The translations under genes were made by a program, and so were the position numbers. The notes beneath the pieces are model-generated. The model was not told where the DNA came from and did no database searches. It was given only the letters and a program-made list of their open reading frames with translations. From contig NC_058133.1 in the NCBI RefSeq assembly GCF_016433145.1, forward strand, positions 267,296,898-267,360,897: a DNA stretch of 64,000 nucleotides, read 5' to 3'. Origin of the DNA: Gracilinanus agilis. Its lineage: Eukaryota. Below, one piece after another: positions 2,790 through 63,074 of the stretch; positions within the stretch are counted from its first letter, which is position 1, and each line of letters begins with the position of its first letter.

Positions 2790-5000
2790 AAAATGTGATT
2801 ATTATTCTATATTCTGCCCTGGTGAGATCATATGGGGATGATGTTCAGTTCTAGATACTACAGTTTAGGAAGAATATTAATAAGCTGAAGTGTTAAGAAG
2901 AAAGCATCCTGGATATTTAAGGGACATGACTCCACAGCACATGAAAATGTGTTTTTGAAAAAGAACTTCTATTTAGCCTGTAGAAAAATAAGGGGTGGGG
3001 GGAAGGGGCACATGATAGCTGTTATCATTCTACCCAAATTAATTTACTTATTTAGTGCCATACCTATCAAACTACCAAAAAACTTTTTTACAGAATTAGA
3101 AAACACTATAACAAAGTTCATTTGGAAGAACAAAGGATCAAGAATATCAAGGGAAATAATAAAAAAAAAACATGAAGGAAGGTGGTCTAGCAGTACCAGA
3201 TATTAAACTATACTACATAAAGCAGTGGTCATCAAAACAATATGGTCCTGGCTAAGAGACAGAAGGGAGGATGATCAGTGGAATAGACTTGGGGTAAGTG
3301 ATGTCAGCAAGTCAGTGTATGATAAACCCAAAGAGCCCAACTTTTGGGACAAAAATCCACTCTTTGACAAAAACTGCTGGGAAAATTGGAAAACAATATG
3401 GGAGAGATTAGGTTTAGATCAACATCTCACACCCTACACCAAGACATATTCAGAGTGGGTGAATGACTTTAATATAAAGAAGGAAACTATAAGAAAATTA
3501 GGTGAACACAGAATAGTATACTTGTCAGATCTCTGGGAAAGGAAAGATTTTAAAACCAAGCAAGAGTTAGAAAAAATTACAAAATGTAAAATAAATAATT
3601 TCAATTACATTAAATTAAAAAGGTTTTGTACAAACAAAAGCAATGCAACTAAAATCAGAAGGGAAACAACAAACTGGGAAAAAATCTTTATAACAAAAAA
3701 ATCTGACAAAGGTCTAATTACTAAAATATAAAAGGAGCTAAATCAATTGTACAAAAAAATCAAGCCATTCTCCAGTCAATAAATGGGCAAGGGACATGAA
3801 TAGGCAATTTTCAGATAAAGAAATCAAAACTATCAATAAGCACATGAGAAAGTGTTCTAAATCTCTAATAATGAGAGAAATGCAAATCACAACAACTCTG
3901 AGGTGTCACCTCACACCCAGTAGATTGGCTAATATGACAGCAAAGGAAAGTAATAAATGTTGGAGGGGATGTGGCAAAATTGGGACATTAATGCACTGGA
4001 GTTGTGAATTGATCCAACCATTCTGGATGGCAATTTGGAACTATGCCCAAAGAGAGTTAAAAGAATGCCTGCCCTTTGATTCAGCTATACCATTGCTGGG
4101 TGTGTACCCCAAAGAGATCATAGGGAAAAAGACATGTACAAAAATATTTATAGCCACGCTCTTTGTGGTGGTAAAAAACTGGAAAACAAGGGTATGTCCT
4201 TCAATTGGGGAATGGCTGAAGAAATTGTGGTATATGCTGGTGATGGAATACTATTGTGCTCAAAGGAATAAAGAACTGGAGGAATTCCATGTGAACTGGA
4301 AAGACCTCCAGGAATTGATGCAGAGTGAAAGGAGCAGAGCCAGGAGAACATTATATACAGAGACGGATACATTGTGGCACAATCGAATGTAATGGACTTC
4401 TATTCAGAGGAAGAACTACAGGAGTGGAAACACAGAAGAAAAACAACTGCTTGAACACATGGGTTAATGAGGACAGGATTTGGATGCAGACTCTTAATGA
4501 CCACCCTAGAACAATTATCAATAATATGGAAATAGGTCTTGATCAAGGTACAGGAAGAAACCAGTGGAAATGTGTGTTGGCTACTGGGGGGCTGGGGAAG
4601 TGGGGAGAGAGAGCAAGAACATGAATCATGTAACCATGGAAAAATTTTTCTAAAAAATAAAAATAAAATAAAAAAATAGAATTAAAAAAATGATATCTGT
4701 TATCAAATATTTGAAAATTGCTATGTAAAGGGATTAGTTTTGGAGCTGAGAACAAAACCAGGAGTAATAGAAATTTATAAAGAGAGGAAAATTTAGCCTT
4801 GATATTAAAAAAAACTTTTAACAATTAGAACTATACAAAAATGCAAGGAACTAGTTGCCTATCAAAGGAACGGGTTTCTCTTCAGTGGAAGTCCTTTGAG
4901 CAGAGGCTAGAGCCCATTTATTGGGTAAGTTGTAAGAGAAATTCTTTTTCTGATATTGATTAGACCAAAAGGCAACTTCACAACTCTAAAATTTGCACAT
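2790..5000 (+). mobile_element. L3/CR1 3' fragment split by an L1 insertion (2790-3026 and 4690-5000)
   Basis: CR1-like text runs continuously across the L1: ...catgatagctgttatc | aaatatttgaaaa...gtcctttgagcagaggct. Confidence 0.75.
3027..4689 (+). mobile_element. 5'-truncated marsupial L1 (ORF2 C-terminus, 3' UTR, A-rich tail)
   Basis: ORFs 2949-3206, 3225-3731 and 3796-4392 are frameshifted L1 ORF2; 15-bp TSD atgata(g/t)ctgttatc at 3012-3026 and 4690-4704. Confidence 0.95.
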
Positions 5001-7689: not shown

Positions 7690-9930
7690 ACTAAAATAAC
7701 TGAAGAGACATATTCAGAAGAAGAGAAAAAATTCTTAATTTGAAAAAAAAATAAGAGGGAAACAGAAAACTATAAACATAATTCTTATAACTTCCAAAGC
7801 AAATGGATTAAATAATCCAATAAAGTAAAAGGGAATGACAAATTGGATCAGAAAACAAAATTCCACTATCTGTTGCTTATAAGAAACACATTTAAAAAAC
7901 AAAGACATACACAAAATAAAAATGAGGAACTGAAAAAGATGTACTAATGCATTAAATAAATCCAAAAAAGGAAGCGTTTTAAAATGTATTATGAATGAAA
8001 TGAATGTAAAATAGATTTAAATCAGAGATGAAGGGATAGTTTAATATTAGGAAAATAACAAACATAATCTTATTAAAATGGAAATATTCAAAAAGCACAT
8101 AATTAAAAGAATAGCTGCAGAAGAACTTTTGTCAAAGTACAAAATAAGTCAAAGGACTCATACAGATTTCATTACAGAATGCTCTTTGAAGAAATAAAGA
8201 ACTTAAATAATTGGAAGACTTTTTTATGTTGAGCTGTGCCAATTAAAAAAAGATACCACCAAAGTTAATTTACTGCTAATGCTATATCAATCAAATACCA
8301 AAAGGTATCAAAAGGGATATTCCATAGAACTTGATAAAATAATAACAAAATTTATTTGGAAAAACAACAGATCTAGACTACCAATGGAAATAATGAAAAG
8401 AGGCAGGGAAAAAGGGATAAATAGCACTTCCAGAAGTAAAGGGGAAAAAATTAGTTTTGGTTGGACTAAATATTTAAAGGGGTGGTTGCCAAGGAATTGA
8501 TTTAATTCCTAATGAAAGACTCAAGTCAGAATGACTTTTATGGTAGTTTATTAGAGAGTGAAAGTAAGAAAGTCAGAGAAAGGATAGGGCAAGATATTTA
8601 ACCTAACATGCTAAATATATTTCCTCCAGCTCTTGGCTCAACCCAGTCAGGGCTAATTAGTCCTCAATCAGAGGGGCCTTAGCCTTGAGCCGAGGGCCAA
8701 GATCCTGGGGATGAATAAAGGAAAGGCTTCAGTCACAAAGCCTCTCTTAAGAGGAGAGTCTCTTCAGAACAATACTGGAAAAAGTCAGTCTTTTTCATTC
8801 ATCACGTGGTAGTTCAAAGGGAGAGATTTAAGAACAGTCTCACCAAGTCTAAGGTCTCAGGTCCAGTAAGCAGATTCTTTACCAGCCTCCAACTCAAACT
8901 CCCAAGAACGAAGAAGTCCCACAGGAAATTGTAACTCCCTTTTAAAAGCCCTTCTTTTGCATCACTTCCTGTGCAATCCTGCCATTTTACATTTACCAAT
9001 CACAACAATTGCTTAGGATTGACTGCTGGGCAGTCAGTTGATTCTGATTAGTTACCTACTCTAGTACACATGGGTCACAGACCTCCCCCTCTTGAGAATT
9101 AAGTGAGGTTTTTTTATGCTTTGGTGATTTAATCTAAAAATAGGCAGGGTAGAATTAATCCCATCTTCACACAGACCTCAAATGATATTAAAAAATTAAC
9201 AGTTTTCAAAACCATCTGGTTTTGGTTATGAAACAGAGAGGTATCAATGGAACAGACTGAACAAGGGAGAATCAACTCTATAGCCCAGTACTTGACAAAG
9301 AATTGTAGAGAATTTATAACCACATGAAAGAATGCCCCAAATATTTAAAAATTAGAGAAAAAGAAATCAAAACATACTGAGATTTCACCTCACATCCCAA
9401 AAATTGACAAATACAAAAAAATGTAATAGTCAATGTTTAAGATGTGGGATGATAGGTATACTAATATACTGCTGGTAGCACACCGAAATGGCACAACTAT
9501 TTTAAAAAGAAATTTGGAACATATAAATAAAATAACAAAAATGTCCATATCCTCTGAACCAGAGACTACATTAATGGGAAGATCCCAGAGGAATTCATCA
9601 ATAAGAAAAAGTCTCCATATAATCCAAAACAGTCATGAACATCACTTTTTTATGATTACTAAGAACTGGAAACAAAGTAGATGTCCATAGATTGGTGAAT
9701 GGTTAAGAAGTCATAGTACCTGTAATAGAATATAACTGTGTTGTAAGAAATGATATATATGATAACTACAGAGACATATAGAAAGATATGCGTAAACTAA
9801 AATTAAGTGAAGTAAGCAGAGCCAAGAAAATAATATATACAATGGCTACAACTATGTAAATGAAAACCACTCAACACAAAAAAAAGTAGCATATAACAAA
9901 ACTATAAAGAACAAGCAGGACAAGAATAAA
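7690..9930 (+). mobile_element. Old L1 ORF2/3' UTR fragments interrupted by an LTR
   Basis: IKANGLNNPIK-like and [12 protein letters not shown] segments; L1 text tagcacttccaga|cctc resumes after the LTR. Confidence 0.8.
8435..9171 (-). mobile_element. Solo LTR, probably ERV1-like, sense to BTBD9
   Basis: 4-bp TSD CAGA (8431-8434 and 9172-9175); minus-strand start tgtgaagatgggattaa matches the LTR at 41671; AATAAA on minus strand at 8547-8552. Confidence 0.85.
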
Positions 9931-19369: not shown

Positions 19370-21430
19370 ATCAAGCAGGAACAAAAGAAGCAATTCTACC
19401 CAATTCTTTCTAAAACAGAAATGTAGTCTCAATACCTAAAACAGAGTAAAAAACAAATAAAGAAAACTATAGACAATAACCCTAATGAGTATTAATGAGA
19501 GAAATATTAACAAAGAGGCCAATAGCAACACAGCATAAAGACTGAACACTATAACCAGGTTGGTTTTATATAAAAATGCAGATTTGGATTAAAAATAGGA
19601 AAAATATATACAAAGTTGATATTATTAATAATGAAAACAATTAAAACATATGATTATGTGTATAACTAGAGAAAATGGATTTGGGAAACATTTATTATGC
19701 ATTTCAGTTAAAAACACTAAAAAATATAAGAATAAATGCAATTTCCTTAATACAGTAAAAAGTATATATCTAGCTATCTACCTATATTTAAAATCAAGAG
19801 CTGAGATCATAGTTGATGTGGATAAATTAGAATCCTTTCCAATAATGTCAGGGATAAATCAAGGATGTCTATTGTCACCAATACTATTTGATATAATGCT
19901 AGAAAAGATAGTGATAGGAATAAAATAAGAAAAATAAATTGAGGGAATAAGCACAGGCAGAGAAGAAATGAAATCATCACTTTTTGCAAATGATATGATG
20001 GCGTAGTTTTGAACTCTCGAGTTAACAAGAAAAGTAGAATAATTATTAACTTCAGCGAAATTGCAGGATATGAAATAAATCTACATAAATCATAATTTCT
20101 GAATATTACCAATAAAACCCATCAGGATGAGAAAAATTCTGCTAAAAATAATTACAGAATATATAAGATACCTGAGAGTCAATCTACCAACATATATAGA
20201 AAGTTATTTGGTTTTGTTCAGGCATTTTTCAGTTAGGTCTGACTATTCATAATCTCATTTGGGATTTTGTCATTTGCCCTTTCCTTCTCCAGCTTATTTT
20301 ACAGAAGAGCAACTGAGGTTGATAGAGCTAAGTGACTTTCCCAGGGGCACACAACTAGGAAGTGTCAGGCCACACTTGAACTGAAGATGAGTCTTTCTGA
20401 CTCTAGGCCCAACACTGACTAATATATGTAAGTACAATTTTAAAAGTTCTAAATAATTTGAGAAGTATTTATTTGAGAAGTGGGTAGGCTAACTAAATAT
20501 AATAAAAATGACAATGCTACCAAAATTTTGCATAATGTACATATAACCCAGATCAAATTGCAAGAAGAGGGAGGACAGGGAAGGAGGGAGATAATTTTCA
20601 TCTTATAATTTTGGGAAACATGTTGAAAATTGTTATTAAATGTAATTGTGAAAATAAAATGTCTTTGAATTTAAAAAATTATTTTATAGAACTAGTAAAA
20701 CAATAAGATATTTCATTTGAGGAATGAAAGGTCAAACATCTCAAAGAAAATAATTTTTAAAAAAGTAGAAATGAAAATGAACCTAGCAACATCAGATCTC
20801 AAATAAAGCATAAATCATCCAAACTAGTTCTGGTTAAAAAATAAAGAGGTGGGGTTAGCTAGCAGGCTCAATAGATTAGGAGCCAGGCATGAAGGGTTCA
20901 AGTCTAGCCTCAGATACCTCCTAGCTGACTCTGGGCAAGTCACTTAACTCCCATGGAACTAATACACAGTACTGATTCTAAGATGAAAGGTAAAGTTTGA
21001 AAAAAAAAAAAAAGGTGATTAGCAGAACAGATTATGTATATACAATATTTCAACCATATAAAATTTAAAGTTTTTGCCCTAAATAAATCCAATGCACCTA
21101 AGACTAGAAGGGAAACTAGGGAAAACTTGAATGAACTAATGCAGAATGAAATAAATAAAACTAGGAGCACAGTTTATACCATAACATTAACATTGTAAAA
21201 ATAGATCATTTTGAAGGACTTAAGAACTCTGATTGATGAAATCAACCAAACCACTCATCTCAAGACAGAGATACAATGGACAAATGAACACATTGAGATG
21301 TATTTTTATGCATGGCTAACAAGATAATTTGTTTTGCTTGATTATATTTATTTGTTGCAAGAGTTGCTCTTTTTTCTTTGAGGAGACTGGAGTGAGAAAA
21401 ATGCTTAACGATTGAAAAAAAATAAAATTT
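19370..21430 (+). mobile_element. Old L1 ORF2 and 3' fragments with nested Mar1 (20205-20420, minus) and SINE-1 (20850-21012, plus)
   Basis: ORF 19650-19928 contains the RT motif SGINQGCLLSPILFDIMLE. Confidence 0.85.
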
Positions 21431-58469: not shown

Positions 58470-59185
58470 ATGTTATTGTTCTTTAGTCATTCTGGTTATG
58501 CCTGACTCTTCATGACTTCTTCTGGGGTTTTCTTGATCAAAATACTAGAGGGGTTTGTCATCTCCTCCAGCTCATTTTACAGAAATTGAAGCAAATGGGG
58601 TTAAGTGACTTGCCCATGGTCTCATAACTATTAAGTGTCTAAGGCCCAATTTAAATTCAGGAAGATTTGATTTCTTTGTTTAAATTTATTAATATTTTCC
58701 AAAGGTTATATGATTCATGTTCTCTCTCTCCCCTTTTCCCTCCCCCCTCCCAGCGTTGACAAGCAATTCCACTGAGTTATACATGTATCATTGTTCAAAA
58801 CCTATTTCCATATTAGTCATATTTGTAATAGAGTGATATTTTAAAACCAAAACCCCAATCATATACCCACCCAATCACATGATCAACCACGTTTTTCTTC
58901 TGCATTTCTACTCCCATAGTTTCTTCTCTGGATGTGGATAGTGTTCTTTCTCATAACTCCCTCAGAATTATCCTGGATCACTGCATTGCTACCAGTAGAA
59001 AAGTCTGTTACATTTGACTGTGCCACAATGTTTCACTTTCTATATACAATGTTCTCCTGGTTCTGCTCATTTTACTCTATATCAATTCATGGAGATCTTT
59101 CCAGTTCACATAGAAATCCTCCAGTTCAGAAGATGAGTTTTCTTGACTCTAGGTGCAGCACTCTATCCACTGAGCCACTAACTTC
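58470..59185 (-). mobile_element. Mar1 SINE split by a short L1 3' end (about 58670-59135)
   Basis: Mar1 text resumes after the L1 tail; flanks ttcaggaagat/ttcagaagat. Confidence 0.75.
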
Positions 59186-60559
59186 CCTCAACATCAAAAG
59201 TAACAGAAAAATAAAGGGCAAGAACTGAGAAAAGAGGCATAAGGTTTGTTAATTAAGTTAATTAGCAAATTTGGAAAGAACAATTTCAATTGAGGAATGA
59301 AGAGAGAAAGTGTAGGGATTTTTCCAGGCATTGGGCTATTAAATGGGTAAAGAAATATAGAGAACTTAAAGGGACAGTAGAGGCAAGCAAGCTTTTTTTT
59401 TGGCTGCTGTCGGAGAGTATGATAATCAACTGGGAAAGAATAAAGAAATGTCGCTGCATCAAAGGTACAGTTAACATTAGACAACATATTTGTAGCAGAT
59501 TTTGTTGTCATGGTTGACTGGCTTACTCCAAAACTAAAGTATATATGGACTTAGGGTACATGTGGAGGCTGGAGAATTCAAAATAATATTCTGAAAAAGA
59601 CTGCCTTTCAATTCATTTAGCTGACTCTTAAGTACATGGAGATTAGCAGTATAAAAGAAGGTTAGAGAAAAATTCTCAAGGATCTTGAATCCTAGACTAA
59701 AGTGTTTTTTGTTGTTGTTTTTTTAAATCCTATAAGCACTACAGAGCCATGTAACGGTTATGAATAGAGTAATGATCTGACCTAAAGATATTTTGTCAGT
59801 AGCCTGACGGAATCAACAAAAAAGGAGAGAGACCTATTAAAAGGAGATAAAATTGCTTAATTAAGAAGTAAAGAGGGCTTGAACTAGGTTAGTGGAAGTC
59901 AAAGGAGAAAGGAAGATGTGAGAAATGTGTTGACAGAATCACCAGCAACTAACTTAGAGGTGTTAAGGATAGGAGAAAAGTAATGGCAAAAGAAGGGAAG
60001 TAACATACACTGAAAAGAGCCTTGGGTTCAAATTAATTTTTCTGGTGCTTACTAACTCTGTAATATGAGACAAGTCACAAATTCCTTAGGCCTTAGTTTC
60101 CTATTCTTTAAAATGAAGGAGTTGAACTAGAGGACCTCAAAGGTCTTTATGATAAAAAATATTATGATACCGATCATAGATATGATTTTTTGTTGTTGTT
60201 TTTTATCCCAGGCAATTGAGTCAATATCATTAACAGAAATAGGAGAAAGAATAGAGTTTTAAGTGGAAAACAATGAAATTCAATCCAATTGGTTTTGGAC
60301 ATGTTGGAGTTTAAGGTGACAGCAGTTCATCCAAGAAGATATCTAGTAGATTAGAATTAAGGGAAAAGGCAAGGGGTAGAAATAGAGTTGGGAGTGATCC
60401 ATATAAAGGCAGTATTTCAAACTATGGGAATACACAAAATTCTCAAGTGACAAAATAGAGAGAAAAAAGGGGGAAAGTCCAAGGGCAGTCCTTGGGGGAA
60501 CATCCACATTTAGGGAATAGGAGAAAGAGAAATTCATGCATAGGTTGAGCCAATATATC

Positions 60560-62200
60560 AAACATGACAATTCTACCTAAATTAATCTACTTATTCAGTG
60601 CCATATAAATAAAAATACCAAAAGATTGCTTCACAGGATTAGGAAAAAAATAACAAAATCCAAACAAAGTAATATTCATATAGCAGACGGATGTAAACAA
60701 GATAGAGTAGCTAGGTTTTCAGTTTATATCCCAGATGATGATTATGTACATTTAGTGTTTGATACCCCTGTCTTTTATCCACTAGTTGATCCCATTTTAG
60801 GCAAAATGGATAAACTTGCATTCCCTGCATGGAGGTGCTACTGTAATCATAATTGGTAAGGAAAAAAGTGGAATGAAAGGGCCCTAAGCCATACTAGCTG
60901 TCAAACTAAGCACAAAGCAGTAATTATTTAAATAATTTGATACTGGTTAAAAAATAGGGAGACCAATAGAACAGATCAGGTACAAAAGACAACAAACCTC
61001 AGTATGTGATAAACCCAAAGACTACGGTTACTGAGGTAAAGGCTTCACTATTTGACAAAAACTACACAAGTTTTTACAGAAAACTGTATAACAATATGGC
61101 AGAAATTAGGTTCAGATCAACACTTCATATCATAAGCCAAAATAGGCTCCAAATGAATATATGACCTAGGTATTAAAAAACCACCTCAAAAAAGGAGGAA
61201 TGTTCAATTGTTTCAGTCATATCTGACCTTATTTGGATTTTCTGGACAAAAATGCTGGAGGGGTTTATCATTTCCTTTTCCAGCTCATTTTACAAATGAA
61301 GAAACTGAGACAAACAGGGTAAAGTAACTTGCCCAGTGTCATACTGCTAGCCAATTGAAAGATGAGTCTTCCTGCCTCCAAACTCTGTACCCTATAAAGT
61401 AAAAGTTCATGATCAAAGAAAGGATAAATTATAGAAAAATTTTAAAAAGAAAATATTGGCTACATGAAATTAAAGTTTTTGAACGAACAAATCCAATGTA
61501 GCTAACTTTAGAAGGGAAAGAGTTAACTAGGTAGGTGAGAAATCTTTGCAATAAATTTCCCTGATAAAATTCTTATTTCCAAAATCTATAAGGATTCAAA
61601 TCTGTGAGAACAAGAGCCATTCCCTAACTGATGAATGATCAATTATAAACAGGCAGTTTTATAAGGAAGAAAGCCATGCTATTTACAGCCAAATGAAAAA
61701 TGACCCATAACACAAGTTAATTAGAGAAATTAAAATTAATAGAAAATTCTACCTCACATCTATCAGACTGGCAAAACTGACAAAAACAGAAAAATGTCAA
61801 AAGTTGGAAGGACCATGGGGAAAAAACCAGACACATTGGTGAAGTTGTGAATTGGTAACAGTATTTGGAAATCAATTTTGAGCTATGCTCAAAAAGTTAT
61901 TAAACTCTAAATACACTTTGACTCAACAACATTATTTATTACTAGTGCATTACCCTCAATTCCTACCCTCAAAGAGATGAGAAAATATATTCAAAAATAT
62001 TTACAGAAGTTCTTTTTGTGGTAGCAACGAATTAGAAAATAAGTGAGCACCCATCAATTAGGAAATGAACGAATACATTTCAGTAAATGAATATAATGGA
62101 ATACTATTGTGCTAAATAATGAAAGAGATGGTTGCAGAGAACAGACAGATTATCCACCGCCATCTCTCTTTGCAGAGAAAACTAGAAAGACTTGCATATA
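60560..62200 (+). mobile_element. Old L1 ORF2 C-terminal fragment carrying the AKTIP patch and a Mar1 SINE (61195-61395)
   Basis: atgacaattctacctaaattaatctacttattcagtgcc... is homologous to the L1 at 3027. Confidence 0.85.
60669..60860 (+). pseudogene. AKTIP: Degenerate AKTIP (FTS) cDNA fragment embedded in an L1
   Basis: VIFI then GCKQDRVARFSVYIPD----DDYVHLVFDTPVFYPLVDPILGKMD-KLAFPAWRCYCNHNW aligns to recalled human AKTIP [61 protein letters not shown] (about 33/56 identities by hand). Confidence 0.85.
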
Positions 62201-63074
62201 GTAATGCAAGGTCCTTTAGTGTTTTAAAAGTGTGAATTGGCTGTTTTAAAATATGGACCTGTGATTTCATCTATTAAAGAAAATCCTTCTACTCATACAA
62301 AGAGGCAATTATCCTTCAGCTCCTAGTTTTAGAGTTACCTGGGAAACTAAGAGGTTAAATGACTTTCTCCTTGGTGACACAACCAGTTTGTGTCAGAGAT
62401 CGAACTTTTAAAAAATTAATTTTAAAAAATCTAATTTTTTTCTCCTTCCCACCTCCCTTCTCCCCTGAAAAAAACTTGTTTTTACAATAGTTTCTATAGC
62501 ATAAATTGTTCTTCTGGTTCTGCTCACTTTACATCAGTTTGTTCTTTTTAGACAGCTGAAGACTATTTTTCTAACATAAAGCTAGCCTAGTATATAATCA
62601 CCTCTTTGTACCACAACTGTGTTATGGTACCTGGCTATGGCTCCAAGATTTTATATGAAAATGTTTGCCACTGATGCTATTGCAGACATTCATTTGTTTT
62701 GGTTTATATACTTTTCGTGAATGTATAGATGTATTCTTGAGCCTAAGTTAAGTACATAAAATGCAGCCAGACTAAAACCCACCAAGTTAATGAATATTTA
62801 CACTACATAATAATGAAAATGAAAACATGAACCTAAACAAAAAACCTAAACAACTGAAACAAAAAAAAATTTATCAACCAAGCAAAAGTAGCATTAATAA
62901 TGTTAGAATGTACTTATAACATAATTTTTTCAAAATAGAAAAAAAAAAAGGATCTAAATTCATTCCCATTAAGATCTATCAGGCTGCTAGGGTTTATGAA
63001 CTTTACCAAAATAAAAACTGATATATTTTTAGAATCCAAATGCTTTCAGTTCTAACAGAAAATACTCAAATAGC

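What the first reader, a model, noticed from the sequence alone, without database searches (positions are those of the whole stretch)
60669..60860. Internal AKTIP mRNA fragment patched into an L1 without polyA or TSD
About 190 bp encode a decayed piece of the AKTIP/FTS UBC-like domain (about 33/56 identities to the recalled human sequence, with a 4-codon loss between ccagat repeats). From memory of the human gene, the piece crosses two exon junctions (near c.414 and c.503), implying a spliced RNA template. It is co-oriented with the L1 and has L1 on both sides. Compared with the L1 at 3111-3190, about 25-30 nt of L1 are missing at the site, and there is loose microhomology (L1 aagaatatca versus gtaatattca). 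This is unlike a normal processed pseudogene. It fits a double template switch during L1 reverse transcription, or RNA/cDNA-templated break repair. If the chimera occurs at many loci, an L1 lineage captured and spread a host gene fragment.
Basis: partly seen in the sequence, partly recalled or inferred. Interest (0 to 1): 0.72.

Follow-up and report, generated by a model that had tools for sequence, protein, structure and literature searches.

The report
Spliced AKTIP fragment inside old L1
A 195-base piece copied from the spliced messenger RNA of the host gene AKTIP is lodged inside an old, dead L1 element; it is a real but single, ancient and decaying scar of a kind already described, not a gene fragment spread by L1.

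Summary
Window 60668-60861 (+) is a decayed internal fragment of AKTIP. It matches residues 110-175 of the solved AKTIP chain (E 6.5e-12). It is about 74-80% identical in DNA to three consecutive exons of the Tasmanian devil gene.

Both introns are missing (848 nt and 78 nt in the devil; junctions c.414/415 and c.503/504). The template was therefore spliced.

The fragment lies in sense orientation inside L1 ORF2 sequence, near ORF2p residue 850. It replaces about 25 nt of L1 (21-35, depending on the alignment). It has no poly(A) of its own and no target-site duplication.

It evolves neutrally: differences by codon position are 13/12/15, and it carries a +2 frameshift, 12-nt and 3-nt deletions and a stop.

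Public contigs show it is single-copy at 80% likeness or more, while the flanking L1 has hundreds to thousands of look-alikes. A related species about 9% diverged carries the same patch at the collinear place. The idea that an L1 lineage captured and spread it is therefore rejected.

The mechanism is not settled. I favour a cDNA patch inserted into an already resident L1 at a break (class-2 templated sequence insertion, about 0.55) over a double template switch during L1 reverse transcription (about 0.3). This is a new member of a known kind, of modest interest.

The parts
60520..60667 (+). Left L1 ORF2 flank. It reads ..[19 protein letters not shown].. then ..ITK. The 5' limit of the L1 copy lies at about 60500-60530.
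   Evidence: 79-80% identical to the L1 copy at 3027-3115. Read depth jumps from 27 (60409-60509) to 336,586 (60510-60610). The homologous stretch of the copy at 8279-8497 aligns to human ORF2p core residues 599-630 (weak).
60668..60748 (+). AKTIP-derived part 1. It corresponds to codons about 108-138 of the exon that ends at c.414. It carries a +2 indel near 60681-60697 and a 12-nt deletion after 60736.
   Evidence: blastn to L001 4925-4991, 79.7%; exon map; exon-wise alignment 64/79.
60749..60834 (+). AKTIP-derived part 2. This is the whole 89-nt exon c.415-503, with a 3-nt deletion. It is joined directly to part 1 with no intron (848 nt in Sarcophilus).
   Evidence: 62/86; codon alignment HLVFDTPVFYPLVDPILGKMDKLAFPAW against [29 protein letters not shown].
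60835..60861 (+). AKTIP-derived part 3. These are the first 27 or so nt of the next exon (c.504 to about c.531), joined without the 78-nt intron. It ends inside the exon, and Q176 reads TAA. The right limit is fuzzy (60858-60869).
   Evidence: 18/27 to the exon start, the unique best offset in L001, against 9/27 for the intron.
60862..61160 (+). Right L1 ORF2 flank. It resumes at L1's own A-run and reads ..MKGP*AILAVKLSTKQ.., corresponding to [15 protein letters not shown].
   Evidence: Aligned to L1 copies at 3160-3442, 8243-8500 and 20610-20870. Depth 2,800-4,400.
61161..61455 (+). Later insertion in the L1. It is a very abundant SINE-like repeat (core 61217-61345).
   Evidence: Other L1 copies join 61160 to 61456 in both runs. 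Depth 1.36 million. Copies also at 2559-2706 and 58507-58644.
61456..62400 (+). Remainder of the same L1: the ORF2 C-terminal part and the 3' end. The end point is approximate.
   Evidence: 61461-62116 aligns collinearly to 3606-4263, downstream of the reference L1 copy. Depth is elevated to 62125.

Best explanation
What it is (shown). This is an internal fragment of spliced AKTIP mRNA, about 195 bp long, running from about c.322 to about c.531. It covers the end of one exon, the whole 89-nt next exon, and the first 27 or so nt of a third. It sits in sense orientation in the ORF2 region of an old, 5'-truncated L1 and replaces about 25 nt of L1. It has no poly(A) and no target-site duplication. 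It is single-copy, shared with a related species, and decaying neutrally.

How it most likely arose (inferred). The L1 copy was already in the genome. A break, or an L1-endonuclease-like nick at the element's own A-run, was sealed with a short cDNA copied from a piece of AKTIP mRNA. A few tens of bases of the recipient were lost, and 2-4 nt of overlap remain at each joint. This is the pattern described as a class-2 templated sequence insertion, or endonuclease-independent/atypical retro-insertion. It has no function.
For: Identity and splicing.

Recipient geometry: the L1 on the two sides is collinear. Only the stretch between ..GAACAAAG and the A-run (25 nt in the copy at 3017-3270) is missing. 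A filled break predicts exactly this. A polymerase that leaves its template for another RNA has no obvious reason to return there.

Ends: both ends of the fragment lie inside exons, so trans-splicing is not involved. There is no A-tail beyond the A-run that all L1 copies have.

Copy number: single copy at 80% likeness or more. Depth is 32 against a baseline of 27, while the adjoining L1 bins reach 2,800-336,000.

Age: it is old. dN is about 0.25, with differences spread 13/12/15 over codon positions. It is present in a species about 8-11% diverged: contig 4 of run X1 spans 60643-61193.

Literature: class-2 insertions lack TSD and poly(A). They show microdeletion and microhomology, and can carry several spliced exons (PMC5110952).
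Against: The sense orientation relative to L1 is only a 50% outcome for a random patch. The patch lies about 150 nt from the 5' end of a roughly 1.6-1.9 kb L1 copy. That is about a 1-in-10 coincidence for a random break, but natural if the polymerase was losing its template near the end of synthesis. The ages of patch and L1 could not be separated. No species was found that has the L1 without the patch. The donor could have been a retrocopy (DNA) and not RNA.
Confidence: 0.55

Rival explanations
1. Double template switch during L1 target-primed reverse transcription. ORF2p copied L1 RNA from the 3' end and jumped to an AKTIP mRNA near c.531. It copied about 200 nt, jumped back to the L1 RNA about 25 nt upstream of where it had left, copied about 150 nt more and stopped. 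The whole unit was inserted as one tripartite element.
For: The fragment is in the same orientation as L1. It lies within about 150 nt of the L1 copy's 5' limit: depth steps from 27 to 336,586 at about 60510, and there is no L1-like reading upstream. Tripartite chimeras attributed to double jumps are described in fungi, mouse and human (PMC2104539). The neutral distance of the patch (about 0.25) is compatible with an old L1.
Against: A return to the same RNA within about 25 nt of the departure point is not expected for a non-homologous jump. No TSD was found for the L1 unit, although that test is weak at this age. Known chimeras carry the foreign RNA at the 5' end, not L1 again.
Confidence: 0.3
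2. An ordinary AKTIP processed pseudogene, or a DNA copy of one, is the source. Either a full retrocopy landed in the L1 and was later trimmed by deletions on both sides, or a stretch of an existing retrocopy elsewhere was copied in by DNA-templated repair.
For: Splicing proves only that there was an RNA stage at some time. AKTIP-like retrocopy models exist in rodents (one search lists 'AKT-interacting protein-like' entries).
Against: Trimming needs two independent deletions that remove all of the 5' and 3' parts and the A-tail, yet take only about 25 nt of L1. No second AKTIP-like copy at 80% or more was seen in the runs. Older retrocopies would escape that test.
Confidence: 0.1
3. An L1 lineage captured the AKTIP piece and spread it to many loci.
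For: None found.
Against: The AKTIP core has single-copy depth in both species, while the L1 flanks have about 100 to more than 10,000 look-alike contigs at the same 80% threshold. There is no second copy in the 64-kb window.
Confidence: 0.03

Closest known systems
Class-2 templated sequence insertions (TSI/TSIP; Onozawa et al., reviewed in PMC5110952)
   Same: A short patch copied from a distant transcript, which may contain spliced exons. No poly(A) and no target-site duplication. A small deletion of the recipient and a few bases of overlap at the joints.
   Different: Those are recent human polymorphisms or experimental break repairs. This one is fixed, tens of millions of years old, in a marsupial and inside an L1. 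That the recipient L1 existed first is inferred, not shown.
Bipartite and tripartite chimeric retroelements formed by LINE template switching (Buzdin/Gogvadze; PMC2104539). The same comparison applies to the L1 chimeras with mRNA fragments catalogued in bioRxiv 10.1101/2025.02.02.635956.
   Same: Co-oriented fusion of an L1 3' part with a copy of a cellular RNA, without an A-tail between the parts. Double jumps are documented.
   Different: In the described cases the foreign RNA forms the 5' end and the unit is framed by direct repeats. Here L1 resumes upstream of the foreign piece almost where it left off, and no framing repeat is detectable.
Canonical processed pseudogene
   Same: Intron loss; made from host mRNA by reverse transcription.
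   Different: It lacks the 3' end of the mRNA, the A-tail and the TSD. Only about 195 nt from the middle of the coding region are present.

Membership tests
AKTIP/FTS-derived sequence | Significant, specific similarity to AKTIP protein and gene | tested here: met
   PDB 8qat_D, E 6.5e-12. The best library hits are all AKTIP-type and their relatives carry PF00179. DNA hits to Sarcophilus exons at E about 1e-11.
AKTIP/FTS-derived sequence | Functional UBC-like domain (Pfam UQ_con hit, intact frame) | tested here: not met
   Pfam finds nothing in the 77-aa ORF. There is a +2 frameshift, 12-nt and 3-nt deletions and TAA at codon 176. Differences by codon position are 13/12/15.
Retro-derived (spliced) copy | Exons joined without introns at the gene's own junctions | tested here: met
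   Junctions c.414/415 (848-nt intron) and c.503/504 (78-nt intron) in L001 are both absent from the window.
Canonical processed pseudogene | 3' end of the mRNA with a poly(A) tail | tested here: not met
   The fragment ends inside an exon at about c.531. The A-run that follows is L1's own and is present in three other L1 copies.
Canonical processed pseudogene | Target-site duplication | tested here: not met
   The recipient shows a loss of about 25 nt and no duplication.
Class-2 templated sequence insertion | No TSD and no poly(A); microdeletion of the recipient | tested here: met
   L1 is collinear on both sides and 21-35 nt are missing.
Class-2 templated sequence insertion | Microhomology or untemplated bases at the joints | tested here: inconclusive
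   There are 2-4 nt of possible overlap at each joint (AG on the left, AAG/TAA on the right). About 20% decay blurs the limits.
Class-2 templated sequence insertion | Recipient site existed before the insertion | not testable with these tools
   This needs orthologous loci from more distant marsupials. The one related species available already has the patch.
LINE template-switch chimera | Same orientation of the parts, with the L1 3' part downstream | tested here: met
LINE template-switch chimera | Direct repeats framing the whole chimera | tested here: inconclusive
   No repeat of 10-16 nt (0-3 mismatches) was found between 60470-60550 and 62100-62700. The element is old and its 3' end is only roughly placed.
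Transduced or captured sequence spread by an L1 lineage | Several copies that share the junctions | tested here: not met
   Single-copy depth over 60712-60812 in both runs at 80% likeness or more, against 2,800-336,000 in the L1 flanks.

The most novel reading that the evidence does not exclude
The structure is the footprint of one L1 reverse-transcription event. In it, ORF2p left its own RNA, copied about 200 nt of a bystander mRNA and returned to the same L1 RNA about 25 nt further on. That would mean the original template stays held in register in the complex during an excursion. If so, internal sense-oriented host patches in L1 copies would be a readable record of such excursions.
Probability: 0.27. 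Interest if true: 0.5.

Novelty: new member of a known kind. Interest (0 to 1): 0.3.

Why it matters
On its own it is a neutral fossil. Its value is as a clean, dated example of a non-polyadenylated, spliced mRNA fragment fixed in a marsupial germ line. Both joints are readable, and the recipient sequence is known from sister L1 copies.

A genome-wide census of such internal patches in L1 copies could separate break repair from polymerase template jumping. The census would record orientation, distance between departure and return, and position relative to the 5' end. A single case cannot make that separation.

Tried and rejected
- Pfam on the ORF gave no family.
- The word search with the 77-aa ORF gave no candidates. 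This was expected from its length limits and means nothing.
- The right edge reads TGgtaagg and looks like a splice donor. I rejected that reading: in the Sarcophilus gene the exon continues well past this point (TGGCAAGTACTG..), so it is AKTIP exon sequence and not an exon-intron boundary.
- A retained-intron template, as in Sarcophilus isoform X1, was rejected: the intron matches 9/27 and the exon 18/27.
- The 77-codon ORF as a sign of constraint was rejected. A +2 indel means the first part is out of the AKTIP frame, and differences are even across codon positions.
- A TSD search around the L1 unit found nothing.
- Direct proof that the flank encodes ORF2p failed, because the pieces are too short and decayed. 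PDB and Pfam gave nothing on eight stop-free flank pieces. The L1 assignment therefore rests on three things: DNA similarity to other copies in the window, one of which lies downstream of an ORF that hits human ORF2p at E 6e-8; a weak ORF2p alignment of another copy; and the very high copy number.
- Dating the L1 separately from the patch was not possible without a subfamily consensus.
- Joined step left out. I built no joined (spliced) AKTIP model. All comparisons were made exon by exon against the genomic locus L001.

Full report
**What is there**

Window 60626-60856 (+) is an open 77-codon stretch. Its residues 17-77 align to residues 110-175 of AKT-interacting protein (PDB 8qat_D) with E 6.5e-12. 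Pfam does not recognise so short and decayed a piece. The word-based protein search found nothing, because it only sees proteins of similar length.

The exhaustive search of 1.84 billion representatives gave nine hits, best E 1.1e-8. A follow-up search from one of them showed these to be AKTIP proteins carrying PF00179. The identification as AKTIP is therefore secure.

**Is it spliced?**

I fetched the Tasmanian devil AKTIP gene (protein P0097, locus L001) and mapped its exons by tblastn:
- One exon ends CCA|GTAAGT after codon 138 (c.414).
- After an 848-nt intron, the next exon runs from CGC TTA GTA.. to ..TGGAG (c.415-503).
- After a 78-nt intron, which isoform X1 retains in frame, the next exon begins GAGAAACCATAATCACATTTGGCAAG.. 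and continues to codon 228.

Against this genomic locus the window gives two strong DNA matches. Window 60668-60736 matches L001 4925-4991 (79.7%), and window 60752 onward matches L001 5867 onward. There is no intron sequence between them.

Only about 27 bases lie beyond the second junction, so I tested them separately. Placed directly after TGGAG, they match the start of the third exon 18/27. That is the single best of all 17,828 offsets in the locus (binomial P about 1e-5). They match the intron 9/27.

All of this was done exon by exon against the genomic locus. I did not build or search a joined model.

**State of the fragment**

Relative to the devil gene the window differs as follows:
- a +2 indel near 60681-60697, so the ORF is out of the AKTIP frame at its start;
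- a 3-nt loss;
- TAA in place of Q176.

Over 52 in-frame codons, 32 amino acids and 74.4% of bases are identical. Differences fall 13/12/15 on codon positions 1/2/3, and dN is about 0.25. This is neutral decay over a long time. The open frame is a chance survival.

**The surroundings**

Left of the fragment (about 60520-60667) and right of it (60862 onward), the sequence aligns collinearly to other L1 ORF2 copies in the window, at 3017-3470, 8243-8500 and 20610-20870.

One of these copies lies downstream of an ORF that hits human LINE-1 ORF2p residues 618-676 at E 6e-8. Another aligns weakly to the ORF2p stretch [26 protein letters not shown]. That places the patch near ORF2p residue 850. Direct protein searches with the decayed flank pieces failed.

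The sister copies read ..GAACAAAG-GATCAAGAATATCAAGGGAAATAAT-AAAAAAAAACATGAAGG... The site has ..AAACAAAG, then the AKTIP piece, then GGAAAAAAGTGGAATGAAAGG. About 25 nt of L1 (21-35, depending on the alignment) are thus replaced by about 195 nt of AKTIP.

Possible overlap at the joints is 2-4 nt. The A-run to the right belongs to L1 and is not a tail.

The L1 copy starts only about 150 nt upstream. Read depth steps from 27 to 336,586 at about 60510, and there is no L1-like reading further up. The copy is interrupted by a SINE-like repeat at 61161-61455 and continues to about 62400. I found no target-site duplication for it, which means little at this age.

**Copy number and age**

Two public runs hold the stretch. 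Run X2 gives contigs identical to the window, so it is the same species. Run X1 is a relative about 8-11% diverged, whose contigs cover the unique flank 59728-60659 and then 60643-61193. The second contig runs through the whole AKTIP piece and well past the right joint. On the left it has 25 aligned L1 bases, a little under the tool's 31-base rule for bridging, and it abuts the contig that carries the unique flank.

At 80% likeness or more, the AKTIP core bin (60712-60812) has depth 32 in X2, against a single-copy level of 27. In X1 it has depth 49, where two contigs overlap at 60765-60775 (not resolved). The adjoining L1 bins have depths of 2,800 to 336,000.

Many L1 relatives of this copy are therefore detectable, and none carries the patch. 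The fragment was not spread. It predates the split of the two species. With dN about 0.25 against about 0.045 per lineage for that split, it is several times older.

Other agents' notes call the genome an opossum or mouse opossum. I did not test that. The SINE and L1 content look marsupial, from my own knowledge.

**Mechanism**

Three things are shown:
- a reverse-transcribed, spliced, internal, tail-less mRNA piece;
- a sense orientation;
- a small loss of recipient sequence.

The rest is inferred. I weigh two families of explanation.

(a) A patch put into a resident L1 copy at a break. This matches the published class-2 templated sequence insertions: no TSD, no A-tail, microdeletion, microhomology, sometimes several spliced exons (PMC5110952). 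A variant is an L1-endonuclease nick at the element's own A-run (the site reads like AT/AAAA), with priming on a non-adenylated RNA and a small target deletion. This family explains, without further assumption, why L1 resumes almost where it stopped.

(b) A double template switch within one L1 reverse transcription, as proposed for tripartite chimeras (PMC2104539). This explains the shared orientation and the closeness to the 5' end. It does not explain the return to the same RNA within about 25 nt.

I put (a) at about 0.55 and (b) at about 0.3. A retrocopy-derived or trimmed pseudogene gets about 0.1, and spread by an L1 lineage about 0.03.

**Verdict**

This is a real and correctly read observation. 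It is an old, single, neutral example of a known kind of event, and its exact route remains undecided. A recent catalogue of L1 chimeras (bioRxiv 10.1101/2025.02.02.635956) looks at sequence 5' of L1. By its abstract and its section on defining insertions 5' of LINE-1, it would not pick up internal patches like this one, so a census of them would be the way to make this case useful.

Noticed in passing
window 61161-61455: A very abundant SINE-like repeat sits inside the same L1. Summed contig depth is 1.36 million, and the consensus of the look-alikes reads ..TTTCTTGGCAAAGATACTGGAGTGGTTTGC.. and ..GGTCACACAGCTAGTAAGTGTCTGAGGCCA... Other L1 copies join 61160 directly to 61456. Further copies lie at 2559-2706 and 58507-58644.
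   Followed up: partly
window 60005-60206: A moderately repeated element (depth 1,100-3,300) reads like a MIR/THER-type SINE core (..cttaggccttagtttcctattctttaaaatgaagg..). The 300 nt between it and the L1 are single-copy at 80% or more, but look like an old, unidentified repeat.
   Followed up: no
window 19650-20870: Another L1 copy. Its 92-codon ORF (19650-19925) still hits the human ORF2p reverse-transcriptase core (residues 618-676, E 6e-8). About 750 nt lie between that ORF and the stretch homologous to the patch site, against about 480 expected, so it probably holds an insertion.
   Followed up: no
L001 5953-6030 (Sarcophilus AKTIP): The annotated devil isoform X1 (P0097, 319 aa) differs from the 293-aa form only by reading through a 78-nt in-frame intron. 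It may be an annotation of an unspliced transcript and not a real isoform.
   Followed up: no
window 60765 and 60775, run X1: In the related species two contigs overlap here and both carry the same two differences. This could be an allelic bubble or a local duplicate. It was not resolved.
   Followed up: no
proteins P0001-P0006: The 50%-identity representatives that matched are mostly faulty gene models: AKTIP cores with unrelated N- or C-terminal ends, for example the Sphenodon entry P0002. The normal 292-293-aa AKTIP appeared only in the second search.
   Followed up: partly
If so, the L1-AKTIP scar would lie within or next to BTBD9, probably in an intron. I did not check the exon or its strand.
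   Followed up: no
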